Positions 5,078 through 45,162 of a stretch of 64,000 nt of DNA are shown here, in pieces. Source of the stretch: Phallusia mammillata (taxonomy: Eukaryota); NCBI GenBank assembly GCA_965637545.1, contig OZ281496.1, positions 2,480,001 through 2,544,000 on the forward strand. The letters are read 5' to 3'. Below the pieces are notes generated by a model. It saw only the letters and a program-made list of their open reading frames with translations. It searched no databases and was not told where the DNA came from. A program made the position numbers and the translations under genes. Within the stretch, counting starts at the first letter, position 1, and every line of letters begins with the position of its first letter.

Positions 5078-5516
5078 CACCCCCCCACCTTCATGTCGTG
5101 GCTGCTGCTGTAATGTTGGGGTATCACCTTGAGTCGCAATATTCATATATCGGGGACACCGTGTACTGTCAGCCACCGACAGAGGTAAAGGTCCCAGGAT
5201 ATCTATTTCCATCGGCTTTAGTTCGCCTGAAGGCCCCCTGGACCGAGCATTAAACTTCTTACTTCTTTCACATTTTGTACAGCTCCGAACGTAGGCTTCA
5301 ACTTCCACACGCCACCCTGGCCAAAAGTGCCGATCGCAAACTTTGGAACACGTTTTGGCCACTGCAAGGTGTCTGCCGCCGTGAGAGGGGTCGTGTATCA
5401 CATCAGGTCGCATCTTTTGTGGGGTAATGAGTCGGTCTACTACACGAACGCCCGGTTAGTGTAGAGAGTCTCCTGTTTGGTAAAGAACATTATTTACAAG
5501 TCGTAAACTACTAAAC

Positions 5517-36990: not shown

Positions 36991-37755
36991 TTGCTTCAAA
37001 ACATATGTTAATTTCCACGTTGAACCAGATACAGCCAATGTTGCTCAATACAACCTACTTTGCATGTTTCAAGTATTTTGCGCACAAACGTTTTCTTTGG
37101 CAATCACTGACTTGTTTAATAGTCCTTTGGTTCTGTATTGAAGAGTCGTCCTTTGTGTCCGTTGCTACTCAAAACCACAGTTGTCTATTTACTAACCGTT
37201 GTATGTAAAATAGCATTGCCAGGTGAGGTACTTTATTGCTATTAATGGTAAATTTGTTGAATGTGTTGAATTTATGTAGAAACTGAAGATACGCTCTAAA
37301 TCAGCTCAAAAAATGCGTTATCATCAGTCCCTACATAAATTAAAGGCATCGAGCATTAGAAATAACTGTAGAAATGTCTCCTTTGATCTGCAAGTCAGTA
37401 CTGTATGTAAGGCGAGCTTTTTTCATGTCCACTCAACCGTGACAACTACGCAGTACACACGCATCGGTGCGGTAGAGTTACTAACACGATAACGAGGATC
37501 TACCCCCCAAAATGACCTAATTTCCGGTAGGTGGCGCAATAGATCATTCCGCGCCAAAAAGGCGTTTGCGCCACGTTTGCAACAGTTTAATTAAGTGGCG
37601 TTTAATTAAGTTTTTAGCTATAGGTGAATTAAGCTGAATTTAATTTAGTGTAGCTTAGTGAAATTTAGCGTCAGTGAAATTAAGCTAAGCTTTAGTGAAA
37701 TTAAGCTAAATTTAATTAAGTGTAGCTTGAAAACAATTAATTTTCGCAAGCAAAC

Positions 37756-40700
37756 ATGGTGAAGGACTCAAATGCACAAGATATGACTCCATGCAATGCT
37801 AAAGAAGCCACGTAGGTTGTTTTGTAAATAAATTGAGAACAAAAGGATAGTTATTTTTTTTGCAGAGATGAAAATGCAAGAACCTTGCATGAATTTGATT
37901 TTGCAACATTAAACCAAATTCAAAAGGTTGGTAATTGCGTGAAAATTTTGATACATGACTTAAAGTATATTTTTTTGGCTGCAGTGGTTTCAATGTAAAG
38001 AAACTGCAGAGAAATCATTTATGCAATTCCAAACTGTGACGGATTTAAAGCTACATTTGCATAAATCAAAGACATATGGTGGGTCTACATTTTAACCTTA
38101 GTTTAAAGAAATTTATTCATCTGCATATATGTAACATTTCAATAACATATTTGTATATGTACACATATATTTAAACACATAAACTTACAGACATTAAAAA
38201 AAGCAAAGTGTGTTGGAACAATGACACTCCATACATTACTGTTCAAAGTAATTGCTGGAAATCATTTCAGCAAAATGAGGAGATGGTTTTCAAGCATGCT
38301 TACACGATAACAATGTTTGAAGTTGCTATGTTTCCAACCTTTAAGGTATCAAAGTTGAAAGTTTAATTATTTTAAAAATATAATTTATTTTAAAAAGAGA
38401 TAAGGTTTATTAACAACCTGTCCTTTAGACATGTTCTTTGTGTTGTGATAAACAAATATTTCAGATACTTGGTCACACAATTTTCTGCTTTATATGTAGA
38501 ACAAGTCACAGTTTAGACGGTGGGTAGTAGGCAAACACATCAAAGAAGCACTTTCAACTGGAAAGCAGCTGTCTCAACATACAGCATTTTACTTAAACGT
38601 TATAAAAATTCCCATTGACATGGTTTGTATAGAACTAAATGTACTTAGTTTTCCTTTTGTGAACGTATAGTTGTTATAAAAGAAACATGTCCTTACATTA
38701 AATATTTTTCAGCTCCCCTAAAGTCATTTTATTATATTTGTAGCAGTTAACGGAGACATTGCCTACAGAAAAAATATGCAAGTAACTCAACCAAGTAGAT
38801 GAAACAAATTTGAAAGTTTTGTTGTCCTATACTTTTTATGTGGTTTAATAAACTATTATTCTAATACATTTCAGTGGTTTTCTACGTTTAAACAAGCCGA
38901 AAGGGCAGTTGAGAAGTTTGAAATTACCACTTTAACCAAATTTATTGTGTACCAAAAAAAGTGTTATGGTATGTGAAACATTTCTATTGTATACTATTTT
39001 GTAAAAATCAACGGTCGCGTATTTATTGCTGATCATGTTATGTTGACAAAGATATCTCAAAAAGTGGTATTCGATGGGACAAAGATTTTATCCCATATGT
39101 TATTGTAAAAAGTGTGTGGCTGGAGTGCCAACATGCCAAAGATCAAAATAAGAAAATAAATGAAAAACGTAAACCATGCATTCCCAAACAGGTATGCTTG
39201 TGTGTTACTCATTACATTGACTAAAAGACAAAAATAGTATTTTGTTGTTGTGTGCAGTTGCTTGATCATCCAAATCCTGCCAAAAAAAAGATGTGTATTC
39301 AAGGTTCAAAAAAGTGCAACTGCAAAGCAAAAATACTAATACAAGAAATACTAAGGTTTCCCCAATTTCAAGTGAGTATTTTTTTCATGTTAATACTCCA
39401 ATAAAAAATAATTTCATATTTACTGATGTTTGCTGTTGTTAATATCAGGTTATGGCAAGATCTCGAAACCCTAGGAATAAGTCAGCTGTGCTTATTCACA
39501 AGGCTTTGAAAGATGAAGCTTCAAGGGTCCATGTTATTGGAGAAGTATGTGATAAACACCATTATTGATTCCAACATATAAATGTTTTTTTTTGATTTTT
39601 TAAATCTTTACCTTTTATTCTTTCTACCAAATATCTCCATAAGTGATCATTGTTTCACCTAATATAATAATTTGACATACATATATGTGTTTGTTTGTAT
39701 TGTAGGCGGCAGGATTTCTTCAAATGGTTGATAAGCGGATTATTGCTAAAATTGATGAAATGGTAAATGAAGGCATATGCAACATTGGGGAGATCATGAG
39801 AGGCCTAAAATTATTTGTGGTGCATGAACTGTTTAAAAATGATAATGTACCATCAAACACAAACAGAAGATTTTTTCCGACAAGAAAGGATGTCGAGTTT
39901 TGTACCAAGTGACTACTATGCCTTCCCCTTCACACAAGGTAACTTCAAAAGCTCCCATTGTCAAGCCAATTTTGAACAGTTTTACACCAAGTGTAGAAAG
40001 CCTTAGAGCAGTGGTTCTCTATCTTTTCCGGGTCGCGTACCACCTGAAATTTTTTTTGTATCGCTGCGTACCACCTAATGTCTCAAACCCTGTTTGAATA
40101 GATACCAAGAAATAAGCCAATTTTCTCAACCCGGCTAGCATATTTAGCAATTTCAAAAGAAAGTCAAAAAACACGAGTTTCGCCCAAACCAGGGCTGATC
40201 AGTTGGGTCAGTTGAGTTGCAATTTTAGATTGGACGTAAATTAGGTATCGCAGAAAGCTACTCGCGTACCACCTGAAAAGTCCCGGCGTACCACTGGTGG
40301 TACGCGTACCACAGTTTGAGAACCACTGCCTTAGAGGTTACAAACGTAATGAACAAATTTTGGTAAATGGAACAGATTACCTTTCAATTGTGGAGTTAAA
40401 GTCACTAGAACCAACTTTACCAAAACATGAAGAGCAACTATTAAAAAGAGTTGATGAACGCTTTGTAGCTGGATGGCTTTATGGCGAAGTAATTAACAGT
40501 TTTTTGTGGCAGATAGTTTTTGCCAACAACCATACTTTGTATGTCTGTTCTATGGTGGCACAACACCTTGAAAAAAAGGGTCCCATTGAAAATCTTTGGC
40601 GCGGCATGTCCCTTACAGACAAAAAGCTTATTTTCATTCCATGGAACCCATCGCAGAGCCACTGGATTCTTTTGACAAATGATATTAAAAAACAAAAAAC

Positions 40701-41150
40701 TTATTTACTTGGATCCTATTGATATGCCTTGTATTAGGACAAGTACAAAGCTTCAAGCTGCAAAGGAGTTGGCTGATTACCTGCTGGCTGAAAAATTCCA
40801 TTTCCAACTAGAATCAGTGGAAGTTCCAATGCGAACCCCACAAAACGATTCTTCTAGTTGTGGTGTTTTCATTTGCATGTACGCAAAATGGCTTGCAGCA
40901 GGCACAAACCTTATGCAGCCTGCTTTCACATTTGTATGTCGAAAAAATATGTTCCACTGTGTTTCTGGTAACTGTCTTCAAGGAAGTCTGAAGAGAGACC
41001 AGTGTAAAATATGTCAAACTGGCACCATGTTAGACAATACCAGCATTATGTTAAGGGAATGGGTTGAGATGCAAACAAGGATTTCACACCAGCTGTCTTT
41101 ACACAATTTCACAATGTTCCATTGTGGACAATAGGTTTATATGCCCTTAA
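37756..41150 (+). pseudogene. Multi-exon CaRF(ALS2CR8)-like domain + Ulp1/SENP C48 protease + degenerate PHD finger
   Basis: Exons encode WLECQHAKDQN, QGSKKCNCKAKI and ELFKNDNVPSNTNRRFFPTRKDV; then GWLYGEVIN, HWIL, YLDP, QNDSSSCGVF; then CKIC...CKQGFHTSC...FICP. Broken by a MITE and homopolymer frameshifts. Start codon tentative. Confidence 0.72.
40009..40328. mobile_element. hAT MITE inserted in the Ulp1 coding exon
   Basis: TIR CAGTGGTTCTC; exact TSD CCTTAGAG. Removing it joins FTPSVESLR to GYKRNEQ in frame. Confidence 0.95.
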
Positions 41151-41287
41151 ATGCTGCAATATCTAGTTGTGCATGTAATATACAAAATATTTTTTTTGCA
41201 TTACATTGTTTAAAAAGTTTATCAGTATCAGTACAAATGCTTTAAAAGTGTTATTACCTAATAAGCATTTTTCCTGAAACACATTAT

Positions 41288-42000
41288 TGTGGTCAACCCT
41301 TAAGCTTATTCGCTTGAACGCCTGAGTGTGGTTAACCGTTAAGCTTTTTTGCTTGAACGCCTGAGTGTGGTTAACCCTTAAGCCAGGGGTGTCCAAACTT
41401 TTTTTAATGGGGGCCAATTTTTACCAGGTAAAGACGCTCGCGGGCCAATTTTTTTTAGAATTAGATACAAATATACGAGATTTTTGAGGAAGTTGTGAGA
41501 TTTCGTTGCGTCAGTACCATGTACACTTCATTTTTACCAGTAAAAAAGGTTCCATGGAAAGCTTTAAAGCTTATCCGGGAAGTCACAAGTCGCCACAACC
41601 CAAAACCTTAATCCAAACTATGGCAGGCCATACGCAACCCAATTAAAAAACAGCCGCGGGCCACGTGAAATGCCGCCGGGGGCCGCATTTGGCCCGCGGG
41701 CCGCACTTTGGACACCCCTGCCTTAAGCATTTAGCTTCAACGCCTGTGTGTGATTGACTCACTGCAATAGTATTTTACTATTACGGCAAGAAGTTTTGAA
41801 CACTTCAACAGGTGTGGTTAGCCTTAAGTCTGCAGATTTAAACCCTGTAGTCTTGAACGCTTAAAGGTGTGGTTAACCAAAAAGCCTAAGGCAGTAAAAA
41901 AACCCAAGGCTTGAACGCTCAACAGGTGTGGTTGTACTACAAACCCCCAGTTTCATAGGGCTACTGGCGAGGCGTCTGGGTTATCCCATGGGTGTGGTTG
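41288..42000 (+). repeat. Dispersed short repeats CTTGAACGC-N4-6-GTGTGGTT
   Basis: About 7 TGTGGT(T/C) cores near 41288, 41326, 41366, 41812, 41867, 41926 and 41993. Confidence 0.7.
41384..41720. mobile_element. hAT MITE (GCGGGCC family)
   Basis: TIR CAGGGGTGTCCAAA; exact TSD CCTTAAGC. Confidence 0.95.
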
Positions 42001-42197
42001 GAATTCTCATGATAGTTTACATGAGTTCTCATATTAGTAAATAAAATCCTAAATATTGTTATCTTTTCATCATAAACATAACTGCCAAAGAACTTGTATA
42101 TATGGAACACATTATGCAGACACTTTAACAATCACTGTTGTGATCATCAGCACATTGTTATTTTTACTTAAAAACTTTCAAAAAAGACACTATAAAC

Positions 42198-42706
42198 TAG
42201 TGATGTACCGAATCGGCTAAATTTCGATTCGGCCGAAACCGAATATTCGGCGGTTTTGCCGAATAAATTCGGCCGAATCAACCGAATCATTTATGACGTC
42301 ACGCGAAGTCGTACGCTACGCGTTTGACGTGAAAAAATGTTTATCTACCAGGCAGCCAGTGCAAAATCGTTGTGTTTCGTCCTTATTTCAGTTCTGTGGG
42401 GTTTAAAATTGCCTTAAGCATGATTGGCAACCTGCCAATGAATTACTAATTTTTTTGACTACCGTGGGAAAAACGATAATGTGTTGAAAAAGATAAACAT
42501 TGACGCAATTTTCGTTATGTTTGGGCTTTTGAAAGATTGCGTGGACCTTAATAAGCAGAAAAGACACGTTTAACGCGTTAAATTTGTGTTCGTAAAAGAT
42601 TCGGTTTGGGCCGAATCGCAACAAATTATTCGGCCGAAACCGAATCTTTGCAAAAATGATCGATTCGGCCGAATAAATTCGGCAAACCGAATATTCGGTA
42701 CATCTA
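42198..42706. mobile_element. hAT MITE with CCGAAT/ATTCGG repeats
   Basis: TIR TAG(TG)ATGTACCGAAT; exact TSD CTATAAAC. Confidence 0.92.
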
Positions 42707-44631
42707 CTATAAACCACTTGTTCATTTTAATTTCTCTTCTTTCTGCAAAGCACAGCAACAGTTTCAAAAAACTTCACACTTAAAGGCTTTTACCATACTT
42801 ACATTTTCCACTGGGGTGTCCTACAAAAATGGTGATGTCATTAGCTCTATCATAGACATAGTCAATTGGCATAAACACCTTACTGAAATCCACTGTCTAT
42901 GTGTTACAAATAATTCTACATACTTACTTTTTTTTAATGGGACTCTTCTTAAGTCTAAAAACACAATGTTGTCATCTATTTTATAAACAGGCATATTTTA
43001 AAAAATTGGTCTTACTTCTGTTCTGAAATTTGCTTCTGGGAAGCCATCTGTAAATAATAATGCAATAGATGGATTAATTACACCAAATTTCAGTTACACC
43101 ACATTGCTTACTTTGCATTTGGAAATATTTTATTTTGTCTGTGAAATATAAGACATATAATAGTAACACATAGTATGGTAATGGTTATAAACAGGTCACT
43201 TACTGTTGTAGGGCCCTAAATTTTCGATAAGGCATAAACCTGTAAAATTGAACATATATACAGCATTTTTATTTATGTTAAATCATCGGGCACACAGATT
43301 TCCTAATTAACAATCAACTTTATTACCTTTTTTGGCAATTTTATTTATTTATCTGTACAATAAACACAATAAATTAAGTTCTCTTGCTAAATTTTTAACG
43401 ATTACTTTACAATTTAAAACAATTCACTTTGCTGTCAGCTTGTTGCTGCAGCTCTATGTGACAATTATCACAGTTTATAAATTTTACGTCCATTTTTTGG
43501 CAACTCTACATGATAATTAATAAATTTAATGTCAATTTTATAAAACAAATAAAACATATTTAAACTACGCACCACAATCTAAGTACACTTTAAATGATAC
43601 ACCTTTTTGGCGCGAATGCTCTATTGCGCCACTTACTGGAAATTAGGATCATTTTGAGGTGAGATTCTCGTTATGGTGTAAGTAGCTCTACCGCTTATCG
43701 GCTTGTCAAGTCATGTTAGAAACGAAAGAGATGGAGCAACACAAAACAGGCGTTTGTGCAGAGACAATGACGGTAAAATAGAAAGACCGATGGCATACTT
43801 TGATGCGCATAAGTAAAAACGGTGGTGAGGTCACTATAATATTACATTTGTGTCGGGTTAGTTTTGTTGTTATTGTCATATGCAGCGGTTTATTGCAGTT
43901 ATATCATATTGTAAAATGCAAGTAAACAGCTATATAGTTAAGTTAATTTTGAACCTGCAATATAAAATAACCGTTTAATCAACATTTAATTTGCGTGCAA
44001 GTACGGTGGTACACCCTGGTGATGGTGCGTCTAATTTTCATGTATCTTGAATAAGCACCTCGCTACATCCATTAAAAAGTGATGCTCAAAAAAGTTTTTG
44101 TTTAATACTTTTATTTACACTTACAATAGATAACATTTACAAAAATTTAACTGACATGTGCTAAGGGAATAAGAGTTAAAAACTTTAGGTAGAACAGTTT
44201 ATCTATGTAAACAAAAGGTTTCTTGTCGCCCGATGGACAAATGTTGCAATAAAGGGGCAAAAGATTAAAGCAGCCCTTCTCGTATTGCTTTGAGCAAGGT
44301 TTAATGCTGACACATCATAGTAGAACGTAGTTTCATCTGCCACAATTTAGTATAAAAGCGATGGCGAACATTTTTAATTAGAGTACATAACTCGGAAAGA
44401 AACAAAGTGAGTACAGATTTTATTATATGTCAACATCAATGAGAAACTTGTTGCTGCATCTTCTTTGCAAGTCTTGCAATCCTAAGCTTGAAATGTATAG
44501 TTTTTAGCCTAATACACGCAGCAGTCATATCTAAGGCGAGACGAAACGTCCTACCACAAGAATTGACTTCGGGTTTCAATTTTCTTTCATTGCAATCAGT
44601 TACTAGCAAATAATTCTAGATTAGACTAAAC

Positions 44632-45162
44632 CAGTGGTTCTCAAAGTATGGGTCGCGACCCAAACATGGGTCGCGCAGGGTCACAAAATGGGTCGCGCTG
44701 TGGTGATTCAATTCTGCCCAAACGAACTTTGTTCATTTCAATTTTCAAGTATTTTTAATTCTCAGTCATGACTGAATTATTGTATCATAGGCATTTTATG
44801 TGGCTTTATCTTAGTAACCTTGGAGTATTGCAGCATAAGTAAATGGTTTTCTGAGAGTTTTGATAGCACCGTAGCCAAATACAGCCTCACTCGACAACGC
44901 TATGCAGTAAAATGAACCAATCATTATAACATGCAGACAATAGCCTTCCAATTATCTGTTACGCACACGGCGATTGTAACACGTTAGCACGGGGAATGAT
45001 AGGAGGTTAATCATACCAAAGTGAATTTTGGAAAGTAACAGTTAGCGTTGATAACTATTCATACAAAAATAAAAAATACATTTTTGTTGTTTGAGGCTTG
45101 GGTCGCAAGATGTTCATAAATCTCAGATTTGGGTCGCGGTCAAAAAAGTTTGAGAACCACTG
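44632..45162. mobile_element. hAT MITE (GGGTCGCGACCC family)
   Basis: TIR CAGTGGTTCTCAAA; exact TSD GACTAAAC. Confidence 0.95.

What the first reader, a model, noticed from the sequence alone, without database searches (positions are those of the whole stretch)
37469..43694. TIR-bounded element carrying a spliced CaRF-like domain fused to a SUMO protease and PHD finger
Seen: ~94-bp imperfect TIRs enclose a multi-exon gene. Its motifs (LECQH, GSKKCNCKAKI, ELF...P...NRRFFPT..DV) match my recollection of the CaRF/ALS2CR8 domain, followed abruptly by an Ulp1 His-Asp-Cys triad and a broken PHD. No DDE core is visible. Known: MULE and Zisupton-type transposons often carry SWIM, Ulp1 and PHD modules; vertebrate CaRF is treated as a host transcription factor. 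Inference: a deletion derivative of a transposon family whose DNA-binding domain is CaRF-like, which would support a transposon origin of CaRF.
Basis: partly seen in the sequence, partly recalled or inferred. Interest (0 to 1): 0.7.

Follow-up and report, generated by a model that had tools for sequence, protein, structure and literature searches.

The report
Dead Mutator transposon with CaRF-type domain
This is a broken, internally deleted copy of a sea-squirt Mutator-type jumping gene whose DNA-binding part is the same domain as in the vertebrate neuronal transcription factor CaRF, which points to (but does not prove) a transposon origin for that supposedly unique factor.

Summary
Window 37471-43692 is a 6,222-bp element with ~95-nt terminal inverted repeats. 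It holds a multi-exon gene whose exons match Pfam ALS2CR8 (the CaRF domain), then Ulp1 (C48) and a broken PHD finger.

It is a dead, non-autonomous copy of a multi-copy Mutator-like element (MULE), not a Zisupton. At least 40 TIR matches occur in the genome, which is Phallusia mammillata by a 99% protein match. Six of six complete copies have perfect 9-bp target-site duplications. Longer copies carry about 2.0 kb, missing here, that encodes the MULE DDE/RNaseH-like core and a SWIM finger.

In the window the deletion joint is out of frame, with a stop four codons later. So there is no CaRF-Ulp1 fusion protein here. The copy also has three nested MITEs, two further frameshifts, a 60-bp deletion in the zinc site, mismatched TIR subfamilies and no TSD.

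More broadly, ALS2CR8+MULE(+SWIM, +PHD) proteins occur from Hydra to frogs. A confident model of the domain is most like the WRKY-GCM1/FAR1/AFT fold plus a helix-turn-helix. Canonical vertebrate CaRF was not compared directly.

The scan had already noted relatives elsewhere in this genome (s1-375522, s1-394874).

The parts
37471..43692 (+). Whole element (6,222 bp): dead, internally deleted MULE copy. The left half resembles subfamily A (L031-like) and the right half subfamily B (L034/L039-like). The flanks CATCGGTGC / GCTTATCGG give no clean TSD.
37471..37565 (+). Left TIR (starts GGTAGAG), subfamily A type
   Evidence: 95-97% identical to the TIRs of L031-L033
43598..43692 (-). Right TIR, subfamily B type. 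It is 85.6% identical to the left TIR.
   Evidence: 92-94% identical to L034/L039 TIRs but 87% to L031
37756..38345 (+). Four small 5' exons (about 37756-37811, 37866-37926, 37985-38078, 38191-38345). Exons 3-4 look like a degenerate duplicate of the first half of the ALS2CR8 domain and lack its Cys ligands.
   Evidence: frames and GT-AG borders. No Pfam hit for 38175-38363, the only part scanned. The borders of exons 1-2 are approximate.
38875..38968 (+). Exon encoding the N-terminal strand and helix that precede the zinc module (FSTFKQAERAVEKFE...)
   Evidence: tblastn to P0008 residues 35-62 and P0002 residues 59-86
39052..39191 (+). Exon with LECQH, holding the first Cys ligand. Matches ALS2CR8 profile positions 10-51.
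   Evidence: 21.4 bits; invariant Cys in alignment A4
39258..39371 (+). Exon with GSKKCNCKAKI, holding the second Cys ligand. Matches ALS2CR8 profile positions 55-90.
   Evidence: 28.2 bits
39449..39544 (+). Exon that has lost 60 bp (20 codons) in frame. The loss removes ...CSVSFPSSGDHSG, that is the first His of the conserved H-x2-H.
   Evidence: alignment with L031, L032, P0002 and P0008
39706..39897 (+). Exon for the helix-turn-helix half of ALS2CR8 (ELF...NRRFFPTRKDV), profile positions 167-225. It ends at the deletion joint.
   Evidence: 46.6 bits; 56-60% identical to P0008 and P0002
39898..39912 (+). Deletion joint: GAG|TT|TTGTACC with 2 bp of filler. About 2.0 kb (MULE DDE core, SWIM, post-SWIM motif) is missing. 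The joint is out of frame, with a TGA stop at 39910-39912.
39900..40719 (+). Pre-Ulp1 region and the N-terminal half of the Ulp1 (C48) domain, including the catalytic His (SHWILL). It is interrupted by MITE 1.
40009..40327 (.). Nested MITE 1 (TIR CAGTGGTTCTC...), inserted in coding sequence with an 8-9 bp duplication (CCTTAGAG). Absent from the other copies.
40676..41131 (+). C-terminal half of Ulp1 (Asp in LDPID, Cys in SSSCGVF) and the broken PHD finger. It is reached only through a frameshift in an A-run near 40700, and there is a second frameshift inside the PHD.
   Evidence: (22.6 bits)
41377..41727 (.). Nested MITE 2 (TIR CCAGGGGTGTCCAAA...)
42198..42705 (.). Nested MITE 3 (foldback rich in TTCGGCCGAA). 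It occurs at a different place in L037.

Best explanation
The stretch is a dead, non-autonomous copy of a Mutator-like (MULE) cut-and-paste transposon family of the ascidian Phallusia mammillata.

The family's transposase gene is split by introns. It encodes, in this order:
- an N-terminal ALS2CR8 (CaRF-type) DNA-binding region, which is a C-C-H-H zinc module of WRKY-GCM1/FAR1 type followed by a three-helix HTH;
- the MULE DDE/RNaseH-like catalytic core;
- a SWIM zinc finger;
- a conserved helical motif;
- a Ulp1 (C48) SUMO-type protease domain;
- a C-terminal PHD finger.

Inferred mechanism: the ALS2CR8 region presumably recognises the ~95-nt TIRs, the DDE core cuts and pastes, and integration makes 9-bp duplications.

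The window copy lost the core, the SWIM finger and the helical motif through a 2.0-kb internal deletion with 2 bp of filler. That is the usual mark of interrupted gap repair, and is an inference here. The loss brings the CaRF-like exons next to the Ulp1-PHD exon, but out of frame.

The copy then decayed further. It has three MITE insertions, frameshifts in Ulp1 and PHD, and a 60-bp loss in the zinc site. Its two ends come from different subfamilies and lack a TSD, which suggests recombination or template switching between copies.

This copy can at most be moved in trans, and even that is doubtful. It makes no CaRF-Ulp1 fusion protein.
For: TIR family:
- There are at least 40 matches in the genome.
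- Paired copies run from 6.2 to 15 kb.
- Six of six complete pairs have perfect 9-bp TSDs, and their TIRs are up to 98.9% identical.

The deletion:
- The window lacks about 2.0 kb between 39897 and 39900 compared with L031 and L032.
- In L031 and L032 that stretch hits PF21056 (25.4 bits) and PF10551 (22.8 bits).
- The next exon, a 548-aa ORF within a 579-aa open frame, hits SWIM (26.2 bits), Peptidase_C48 (53.5 bits) and PHD (16.4 bits, below its 24-bit cut-off).

The same order in database proteins:
- Ciona P0002 has ALS2CR8 at 127.6 bits, RNaseH-like at 46.9 and MULE at 36.7.
- P0008 has ALS2CR8 at 134, MULE at 48 and SWIM at 31 bits.

MULE catalytic motifs can be read directly in L031 and L032: LLDATYKT, FMTDKCDAE, CDFH and NNGVERQN.

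Joint and lesions.

Species: P0001 is 99% identical to a Phallusia mammillata UniProt entry.
Against: - No fully intact autonomous copy was shown. L031 and L032 have frameshifts in the core, and L033, L034, L036 and L039 have other deletions.
- No transcript or read evidence was obtained for this copy.
- Binding of ALS2CR8 to the TIRs is inferred, not shown.
- The window copy has no TSD, so its own insertion event cannot be reconstructed.
Confidence: 0.93

Rival explanations
1. It is a Zisupton/KDZ-type element, or a derivative of one. These also combine SWIM and Ulp1 domains.
For: Both domains are present in full-length copies.
Against: - The TSD is 9 bp in six of six copies. Zisupton makes 8 bp (from my own knowledge).
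- The core hits MULE PF10551 and ZSWIM1-3 RNaseH-like PF21056.
- No KDZ family appeared in any Pfam scan at E up to 0.1-1.
Confidence: 0.02
2. It is a host gene, or a decayed duplicate of one, encoding ALS2CR8-Ulp1-PHD without a transposase. It would be like the expressed single-copy Phallusia genes P0001 and P0012, and only happens to lie between repeats.
For: - Such genes exist. P0001 (C3:24.69 Mb) and P0012 (C3:27.91 Mb) are single-copy and appear in transcript-derived protein records.
- Ciona has LOC100185158 with the same order of domains.
Against: - The window sequence is 88-100% identical over its length to TIR-bounded copies with TSDs.
- It is only 33-42% identical in protein to P0001 and P0012.
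- Its joint is out of frame with a stop.
- It carries several disabling lesions.
Confidence: 0.03
3. The transposon family captured a host CaRF-type DNA-binding domain, rather than CaRF descending from a transposase. In that case the element says nothing about the origin of CaRF.
For: - MULEs are known to acquire host fragments (Pack-MULEs; PMC6446971).
- The ALS2CR8 tree is poorly resolved: 36 of 75 inner branches are open. It was not rooted, and canonical CaRF is absent from it.
Against: - MULE-bearing proteins are scattered through the whole ALS2CR8 tree and occur from Cnidaria to frogs.
- The fold is closest to AFT2, WRKY and FAR1, which are the DNA-binding domain types native to MULE transposases (PMC1702500).
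- A post-SWIM transposase motif recurs directly after ALS2CR8 in 13 of 106 MULE-less proteins, against 0 of 530 shuffled controls.
Confidence: 0.2

Closest known systems
Mutator-like elements (MULE/MuDR superfamily), especially FAR1/FHY3-type and Jittery-type MULEs with an N-terminal WRKY-GCM1/FAR1 domain, a DDE core and a C-terminal SWIM finger
   Same: - Long TIRs and a 9-bp TSD.
- A PF10551 core with the D, D, CxxH and E motifs, and a SWIM finger after the core.
- An N-terminal zinc DNA-binding domain of WRKY-GCM1 type.
- Internal-deletion derivatives.
   Different: - The DNA-binding region is the animal ALS2CR8 (CaRF) family, with an added HTH half.
- The gene is split by many introns.
- It carries a Ulp1 plus PHD tail.
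- The host is a chordate, where a 2019 survey found almost no MULEs (PMC6446971).
Plant KI-MULEs (Kaonashi) and other MULEs that carry Ulp1-like protease domains; Rehavkus MULEs with a PHD finger
   Same: A C48/Ulp1 protease and/or a PHD finger is joined to a Mutator transposase. Earlier notes of this scan report MULE-SWIM-Ulp1-PHD families in this same genome (s1-399164, s1-358930).
   Different: - Here the Ulp1 domain lies between the post-SWIM motif and the PHD finger of an ALS2CR8-type MULE.
- In this family Ulp1 was seen only in tunicates. The Hydra and frog members have the PHD finger but no detectable C48 domain.
Vertebrate CaRF (ALS2CR8), calcium-response factor
   Same: The window's exons, and the full-length relatives, match the Pfam family built on CaRF over nearly its whole length, profile positions 4-231 of 235 at 128-138 bits. 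NCBI names some fragments of this transposon family 'calcium-responsive transcription factor-like'.
   Different: - CaRF is a single-copy host transcription factor with no DDE core. It was described as having no homology to any DNA-binding family (PMC2877716).
- Canonical CaRF itself was not aligned here. Only 'CaRF-like' proteins of Ciona (P0211) and a fish (P0149) were.
Zisupton / KDZ transposons
   Same: SWIM and Ulp1 modules sit on a large eukaryotic DNA transposon.
   Different: The TSD is 9 bp, not 8. The core is MULE, not KDZ.

Membership tests
MULE / Mutator superfamily | Target-site duplication of 8-11 bp (typically 9) | tested here: met
   Six of six complete copies have perfect 9-bp TSDs. 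The window copy itself has none (CATCGGTGC vs GCTTATCGG).
MULE / Mutator superfamily | Long terminal inverted repeats | tested here: met
   TIRs of about 95 nt, 98-99% identical within L031, L032 and L035+36, and 85.6% in the window.
MULE / Mutator superfamily | MULE DDE transposase core (PF10551 / RNaseH-like) with D, D, CxxH and E motifs | tested here: met
   - Absent from the window, where it is deleted.
- Present in L031 and L032 at 22.8 and 25.4 bits. These are fragments cut by frameshifts and fall below the cut-offs.
- Above the cut-offs in the close relatives P0002 (36.7 and 46.9 bits) and P0008 (48.3 and 52.4 bits).
- The motifs can be read.
MULE / Mutator superfamily | SWIM zinc finger C-terminal to the core | tested here: met
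   PF04434 scores 26.2 bits in L031 and 31.1 in P0008, against a cut-off of 19.6. It is deleted in the window.
MULE / Mutator superfamily | Demonstrated mobility (excision, new insertions, polymorphic sites) | not testable with these tools
   Only one assembly was available, and the read tool gave nothing.
Pfam ALS2CR8 (CaRF domain, PF15299) | Match to the family model above the gathering score | tested here: met
   - Window exons score 21.4, 28.2 and 46.6 bits, colinear, and the last is above the 28.9-bit cut-off on its own.
- All 78 aligned homologues match.
- P0001 scores 130.7, P0002 127.6 and P0008 134-138 bits.
Pfam ALS2CR8 (CaRF domain, PF15299) | Intact conserved C-C-H-H positions | tested here: not met
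   C, C, H and H are invariant in 78 homologues. The window copy has lost the first His through a 60-bp deletion.
WRKY-GCM1 / FAR1 fold superfamily (for the N-terminal half of ALS2CR8) | Four-stranded sheet with a zinc site; structural similarity to WRKY, GCM, FAR1 or AFT | tested here: inconclusive
   - The model has pLDDT 92.8.
- The best solved match for residues 1-163 is AFT2-DNA (Z 6.9, rmsd 2.8, 71 residues). Three WRKY domains follow at Z 5.2-5.3.
- A FAR1 cluster gives TM 0.61 by target over 109 residues.
- The Z values are below the tool's caution line of 8.
- A sequence link to FAR1 is only marginal (E 0.03-0.12).
Ulp1 / Peptidase_C48 | C48 domain with the His-Asp-Cys triad in one frame | tested here: not met
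   The window has all three residues, but they are split by a frameshift near 40700 and a MITE insertion. L031 has the domain intact at 53.5 bits.
Zisupton / KDZ | 8-bp TSD and a KDZ-type transposase core | tested here: not met
   The TSD is 9 bp. No KDZ family appeared in the Pfam scans, and the core is MULE.
Vertebrate CaRF orthologue group | Orthology or direct alignment with canonical CaRF beyond the Pfam model | not tested
Only NCBI-named 'CaRF-like' proteins P0211 (Ciona) and P0149 (Channa) were in hand.

The most novel reading that the evidence does not exclude
The DNA-binding region of CaRF, published as unrelated to any known family, is the WRKY-GCM1/FAR1-type zinc module plus HTH of an ancient, pan-metazoan MULE clade. 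CaRF and CaRF-like host genes arose, probably more than once, from internal-deletion derivatives that lost the DDE-SWIM core but kept the DNA-binding region and a post-SWIM helical motif. That is the kind of derivative seen dead in this window and alive in two expressed ascidian genes (P0001, P0012).
Probability: 0.55. Interest if true: 0.65.

Novelty: new variant of a known kind. Interest (0 to 1): 0.55.

Why it matters
The window copy on its own is ordinary genomic debris. The family it belongs to matters for three reasons.

1. It gives CaRF an evolutionary and structural home. A 2010 study stated that CaRF has no homology to any DNA-binding family and called for a structure (PMC2877716). 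I found no paper that links ALS2CR8 to transposases.

2. It shows MULEs with clean TIRs and TSDs in a chordate. Relatives occur in amphioxus and are multi-copy in dendrobatid frogs. A 2019 survey had found almost no chordate MULEs (PMC6446971).

3. The same genome holds three stages side by side: transposon copies, dead deletion derivatives, and expressed single-copy genes that lack the core. One of those genes has a catalytically dead Ulp1 domain and one has an intact triad. Together they form a natural series for studying how transposases turn into transcription factors.

Tried and rejected
- Word-based protein searches with the L045 ORF, with P0001 residues 40-330 and with a 27-protein alignment returned only 1-2 hits each. 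They did not reach vertebrate CaRF.
- A profile search of PDB sequences found nothing meaningful.
- Foldseek against the PDB gave no match at E <= 0.001. Only the exhaustive aligner gave WRKY and AFT2 matches.
- RNA evidence: no run on record as RNA holds the stretch.
- The joined, spliced protein of the window gene or of L031 was never built or searched.
- A clean TSD for the window copy was sought and not found. The flanks share only ATCGG, offset by 3 bp.
- The Zisupton reading was rejected on TSD length and core type.
- The host-gene reading was rejected on copy number, TIR/TSD structure and the out-of-frame joint.
- I did not look for or single out an intact autonomous copy.


Full report
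**1. What is in the window**

Inverted repeats bound the stretch. The repeat finder reports arms 37469-37549 and 43614-43694, 81 nt and 81% complementary. When the ends are fixed on other copies (TIR begins GGTAGAG), the element is 37471-43692, or 6,222 bp. Its two ~95-nt TIRs are 85.6% identical.

On the + strand there is a gene of at least nine short exons with canonical AG/GT borders.

- 39033-39221 hits PF15299 ALS2CR8 at profile positions 10-51 (21.4 bits).
- 39225-39401 hits positions 55-90 (28.2 bits).
- 39706-39909 hits positions 167-225 (46.6 bits; cut-off 28.9).
- 40333-40719 and 40676-41131 hit Peptidase_C48 (15.7 and 22.6 bits).

No DDE domain is present. The spliced protein was never joined. 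All searches were exon by exon.

**2. It is one copy of a repeated, TIR-bounded family**

The left TIR finds at least 40 places in the window's genome, which is 240 Mb in 312 contigs. Many of these form inward-facing pairs 6-15 kb apart. I fetched eight of them.

Six of six complete pairs have perfect 9-bp target-site duplications: GAATTTCCC, GTGTTTGTA, CCTCTTTAT, GACGGCCAG, CAATATAGT and CATAAATTT. TIR identity within a copy reaches 98.9%.

blastn shows that the window copy is colinear with these copies at 88-100% identity across the coding part, falling to 78-85% against subfamily A in the non-coding right part. It lacks about 2.0 kb between 39897 and 39900, where L031 has positions 5103 to 3095.

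Other copies have different internal deletions. L034 and L039 keep 1.0 kb of that stretch. L033 and L036 lose other parts. This is the usual pattern for non-autonomous DNA transposon derivatives.

**3. What the missing piece encodes**

In L031 and L032 the extra 2 kb reads LLDATYKT..., FMTDKCDAE, CDFH and NNGVERQN. It hits ZSWIM1-3 RNaseH-like (25.4 bits) and MULE (22.8 bits). These are fragments, because both copies have frameshifts there.

The next exon is a 548-aa ORF within a 579-aa open frame. It has SWIM (26.2 bits), Peptidase_C48 (53.5 bits) and a PHD finger (16.4 bits, below its 24-bit cut-off).

Database proteins give the same order without breaks:
- Ciona intestinalis P0002 has ALS2CR8 at 127.6 bits, RNaseH-like at 46.9 and MULE at 36.7.
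- P0008 has ALS2CR8 at 134, MULE at 48 and SWIM at 31 bits. It is 48-77% identical to L031 over its tblastn pieces.

With long TIRs, a 9-bp TSD, a MULE core and a SWIM finger, the family is a Mutator-like element. It is not a Zisupton: no KDZ hit appeared, and the TSD is not 8 bp.

**4. State of the window copy**

- The deletion joint reads GAG|TT|TTGTACC, with 2 bp of filler. The ALS2CR8 frame runs into TGA at 39910-39912. So the 'fusion' of a CaRF-like domain to Ulp1 is a juxtaposition of DNA, not a protein.
- A MITE (40009-40327) sits in the pre-Ulp1 coding sequence. Two more MITEs lie at 41377-41727 and 42198-42705.
- There is a frameshift near 40700 inside Ulp1 and another inside the PHD finger.
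- A 60-bp in-frame loss in exon 39449-39544 removes the first His of the conserved H-x2-H.
- The left part, up to about 40008, is closest to subfamily A (L031-like). The right part, from about 40328, is closest to subfamily B (L034/L039-like).
- The flanks (CATCGGTGC / GCTTATCGG) are not a duplication. I infer recombination or template switching between copies, but this is not shown.

**5. Species and host relatives**

A 565-aa open frame elsewhere on the same chromosome (L045, C3:24692694-24694388) is 99% identical to a Phallusia mammillata UniProt protein (P0001, 751 aa). The genome is therefore taken to be that ascidian.

P0001 is single-copy. It has ALS2CR8 (130.7 bits), a Ulp1-like region aligned colinearly with the transposon's but with His changed to Asp and Cys to Ala, and a good PHD finger (29.8 bits). 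It has no MULE or SWIM domain.

A second single-copy gene, P0012 (C3:27908068-27910326), has the same core-less order. So does its Ciona counterpart LOC100185158 (P0080, P0153). Both have ALS2CR8 and C48 (43-44 bits) with an intact triad.

Phallusia also has two CaRF-like genes without Ulp1 (L043, L044). L044 is 62-65% identical to Ciona 'calcium-responsive transcription factor-like' P0211.

In an ALS2CR8 tree, the tunicate transposases and the tunicate core-less genes form one clade with SH-aLRT support of 100.

**6. The wider family**

A profile of four tunicate ALS2CR8 regions found 1,428 cluster representatives at E <= 0.001. Of the best 150, 45 also carry the family's MULE region and 22 carry its SWIM region. 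Nearly all of those with 700 aa or more do.

Named examples come from Hydra, Lottia, Pecten, Mizuhopecten, Pinctada, Procambarus, Acanthaster, Diadema, Branchiostoma, Ciona, Lineus and the frogs Phyllobates and Ranitomeya. In the frogs and in Hydra they are multi-copy.

The Hydra and frog members end in a PHD finger. Ulp1 was seen only in tunicates.

NCBI names some Hydra fragments of these transposases 'calcium-responsive transcription factor-like'.

**7. Fold of the ALS2CR8 region**

In 78 aligned domains, two Cys and two His are invariant. AlphaFold2 on this alignment gives a model with pLDDT 92.8.

Foldseek against the PDB found nothing significant. The exhaustive aligner gave the following:
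- For residues 1-163, AFT2 bound to DNA is first (4lmg_A: Z 6.9, rmsd 2.8, 71 residues). Three WRKY domains follow at Z 5.2-5.3.
- For residues 163-248, the matches are homeodomain or Myb-like three-helix DNA-binding domains at Z 5-6.7. They include HTH domains of the Tc3, Mu, IstA and TnsB transposases.

These Z values lie under the tool's caution line of 8.

The ESM Atlas shape search lists these neighbours (similar):
- a cnidarian ALS2CR8/MULE cluster;
- a chordate 'CaRF-like' cluster (TM 0.50 by query);
- a FAR1 cluster (TM 0.61 by target, 109 residues, rmsd 2.9);
- an AFT cluster.

WRKY-GCM1-type domains are the known DNA-binding domains of MULE transposases (PMC1702500). Together this makes a WRKY-GCM1/FAR1-type module plus HTH the best reading. 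It rests on predicted structures and middling scores.

**8. A shared motif after the core**

A helical motif (roughly C..LL..I..LTY.v.d...L..l...L) follows the SWIM finger in transposases from Hydra to frogs.

A profile built only from proteins that carry both MULE and SWIM scores 10 bits or more in 13 of 106 MULE-less ALS2CR8 proteins. In each case the match lies about 20-45 residues after ALS2CR8. Controls gave 0 of 106 reversed and 0 of 530 shuffled sequences, with a maximum of 6.3 bits.

Crinoid CaRF-like proteins score 25-28 bits. The Ciona and fish CaRF-like proteins have a look-alike segment at the same place, but it is not significant on its own (1-4 bits).

This fits repeated loss of the DDE-SWIM core from a transposase. 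Some of the strong hits may simply be gene models on deleted transposon copies.

**9. Literature**

The CaRF paper states that the DNA-binding domain has no homology to known families. It also reports only one CaRF-like gene per species, including Nematostella and amphioxus (PMC2877716).

None of these searches returned a paper linking the domain to transposons:
- ALS2CR8 with transposase;
- CaRF with transposon;
- PF15299;
- 'calcium-responsive transcription factor' with transposase.

Neither the WRKY-GCM1 survey nor a 2023 survey of transposon-derived animal transcription factors mentions CaRF. The 2019 MULE survey found almost no chordate MULEs.

The library covers open-access papers only. 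The domain co-occurrence is also visible in automatic database annotation.

**10. Earlier notes of this scan**

First readers flagged what I find to be the P0012 locus (s1-394874) and a full CaRF-like MULE on another contig (s1-375522). Follow-ups on other MULE-SWIM-Ulp1-PHD families in this genome state that this tail is 'already noted in print' (s1-399164). I did not check that claim.

**Verdict**

The family is MULE, not Zisupton. This copy makes no fusion protein. The link to the origin of CaRF is well motivated but not proven.

Noticed in passing
L045:4694-6388 (G000 C3:24692694-24694388; upstream exons at C3:24691909-24692909): A single-copy gene present in a Phallusia protein record (P0001, 751 aa). 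It has ALS2CR8, a Ulp1-like region with catalytic His changed to Asp and Cys changed to Ala, and an intact PHD finger. It has no MULE or SWIM domain. It looks like a domesticated, core-less derivative of this transposon clade.
   Followed up: partly
G000 C3:27908068-27910326 (P0012); Ciona P0080/P0153: A second single-copy core-less gene, with ALS2CR8 and Ulp1 with an intact His-Asp-Cys triad. Ciona LOC100185158 has the same order of domains. The sequence passes from the segment just after ALS2CR8 straight to the segment that follows SWIM in the transposase, as if by an in-frame deletion.
   Followed up: partly
L043 (G000 C7:18589001-18599000) and L044 (C7:17375001-17385000): Two CaRF-like host genes without a MULE, Ulp1 or PHD domain. 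L044 is the likely orthologue of Ciona 'calcium-responsive transcription factor-like' (62-65% identity).
   Followed up: partly
L031:3300-3500 (minus strand) and database proteins P0093, P0072, P0123, P0101: A conserved helical motif after the SWIM finger in ALS2CR8-MULE transposases from Hydra to frogs. The same motif occurs directly after ALS2CR8 in 13 of 106 MULE-less family members, against none in reversed or shuffled controls.
   Followed up: yes
window 37985-38345: Exons 3-4 read like a degenerate duplicate of the first half of the ALS2CR8 zinc module (WFQCKETAEKSF... / ...CWNNDTPYITVQSNCWKSF) and lack the Cys ligands. Several database relatives (P0003, P0006, P0016, P0046, P0117) also carry two or three partial copies of the domain.
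   Followed up: no
window 40009-40327, 41377-41727, 42198-42705, and 44626-44662: Three different MITEs are nested in the element. A further copy of the first MITE's terminus lies about 1 kb downstream of the element.
   Followed up: no
database proteins P0123, P0176-P0185: ALS2CR8-MULE-SWIM-PHD proteins are multi-copy in dendrobatid frogs (Phyllobates terribilis on 10 or more contigs; also Ranitomeya). This clade may therefore be recently active in a vertebrate.
   Followed up: no
   Followed up: no
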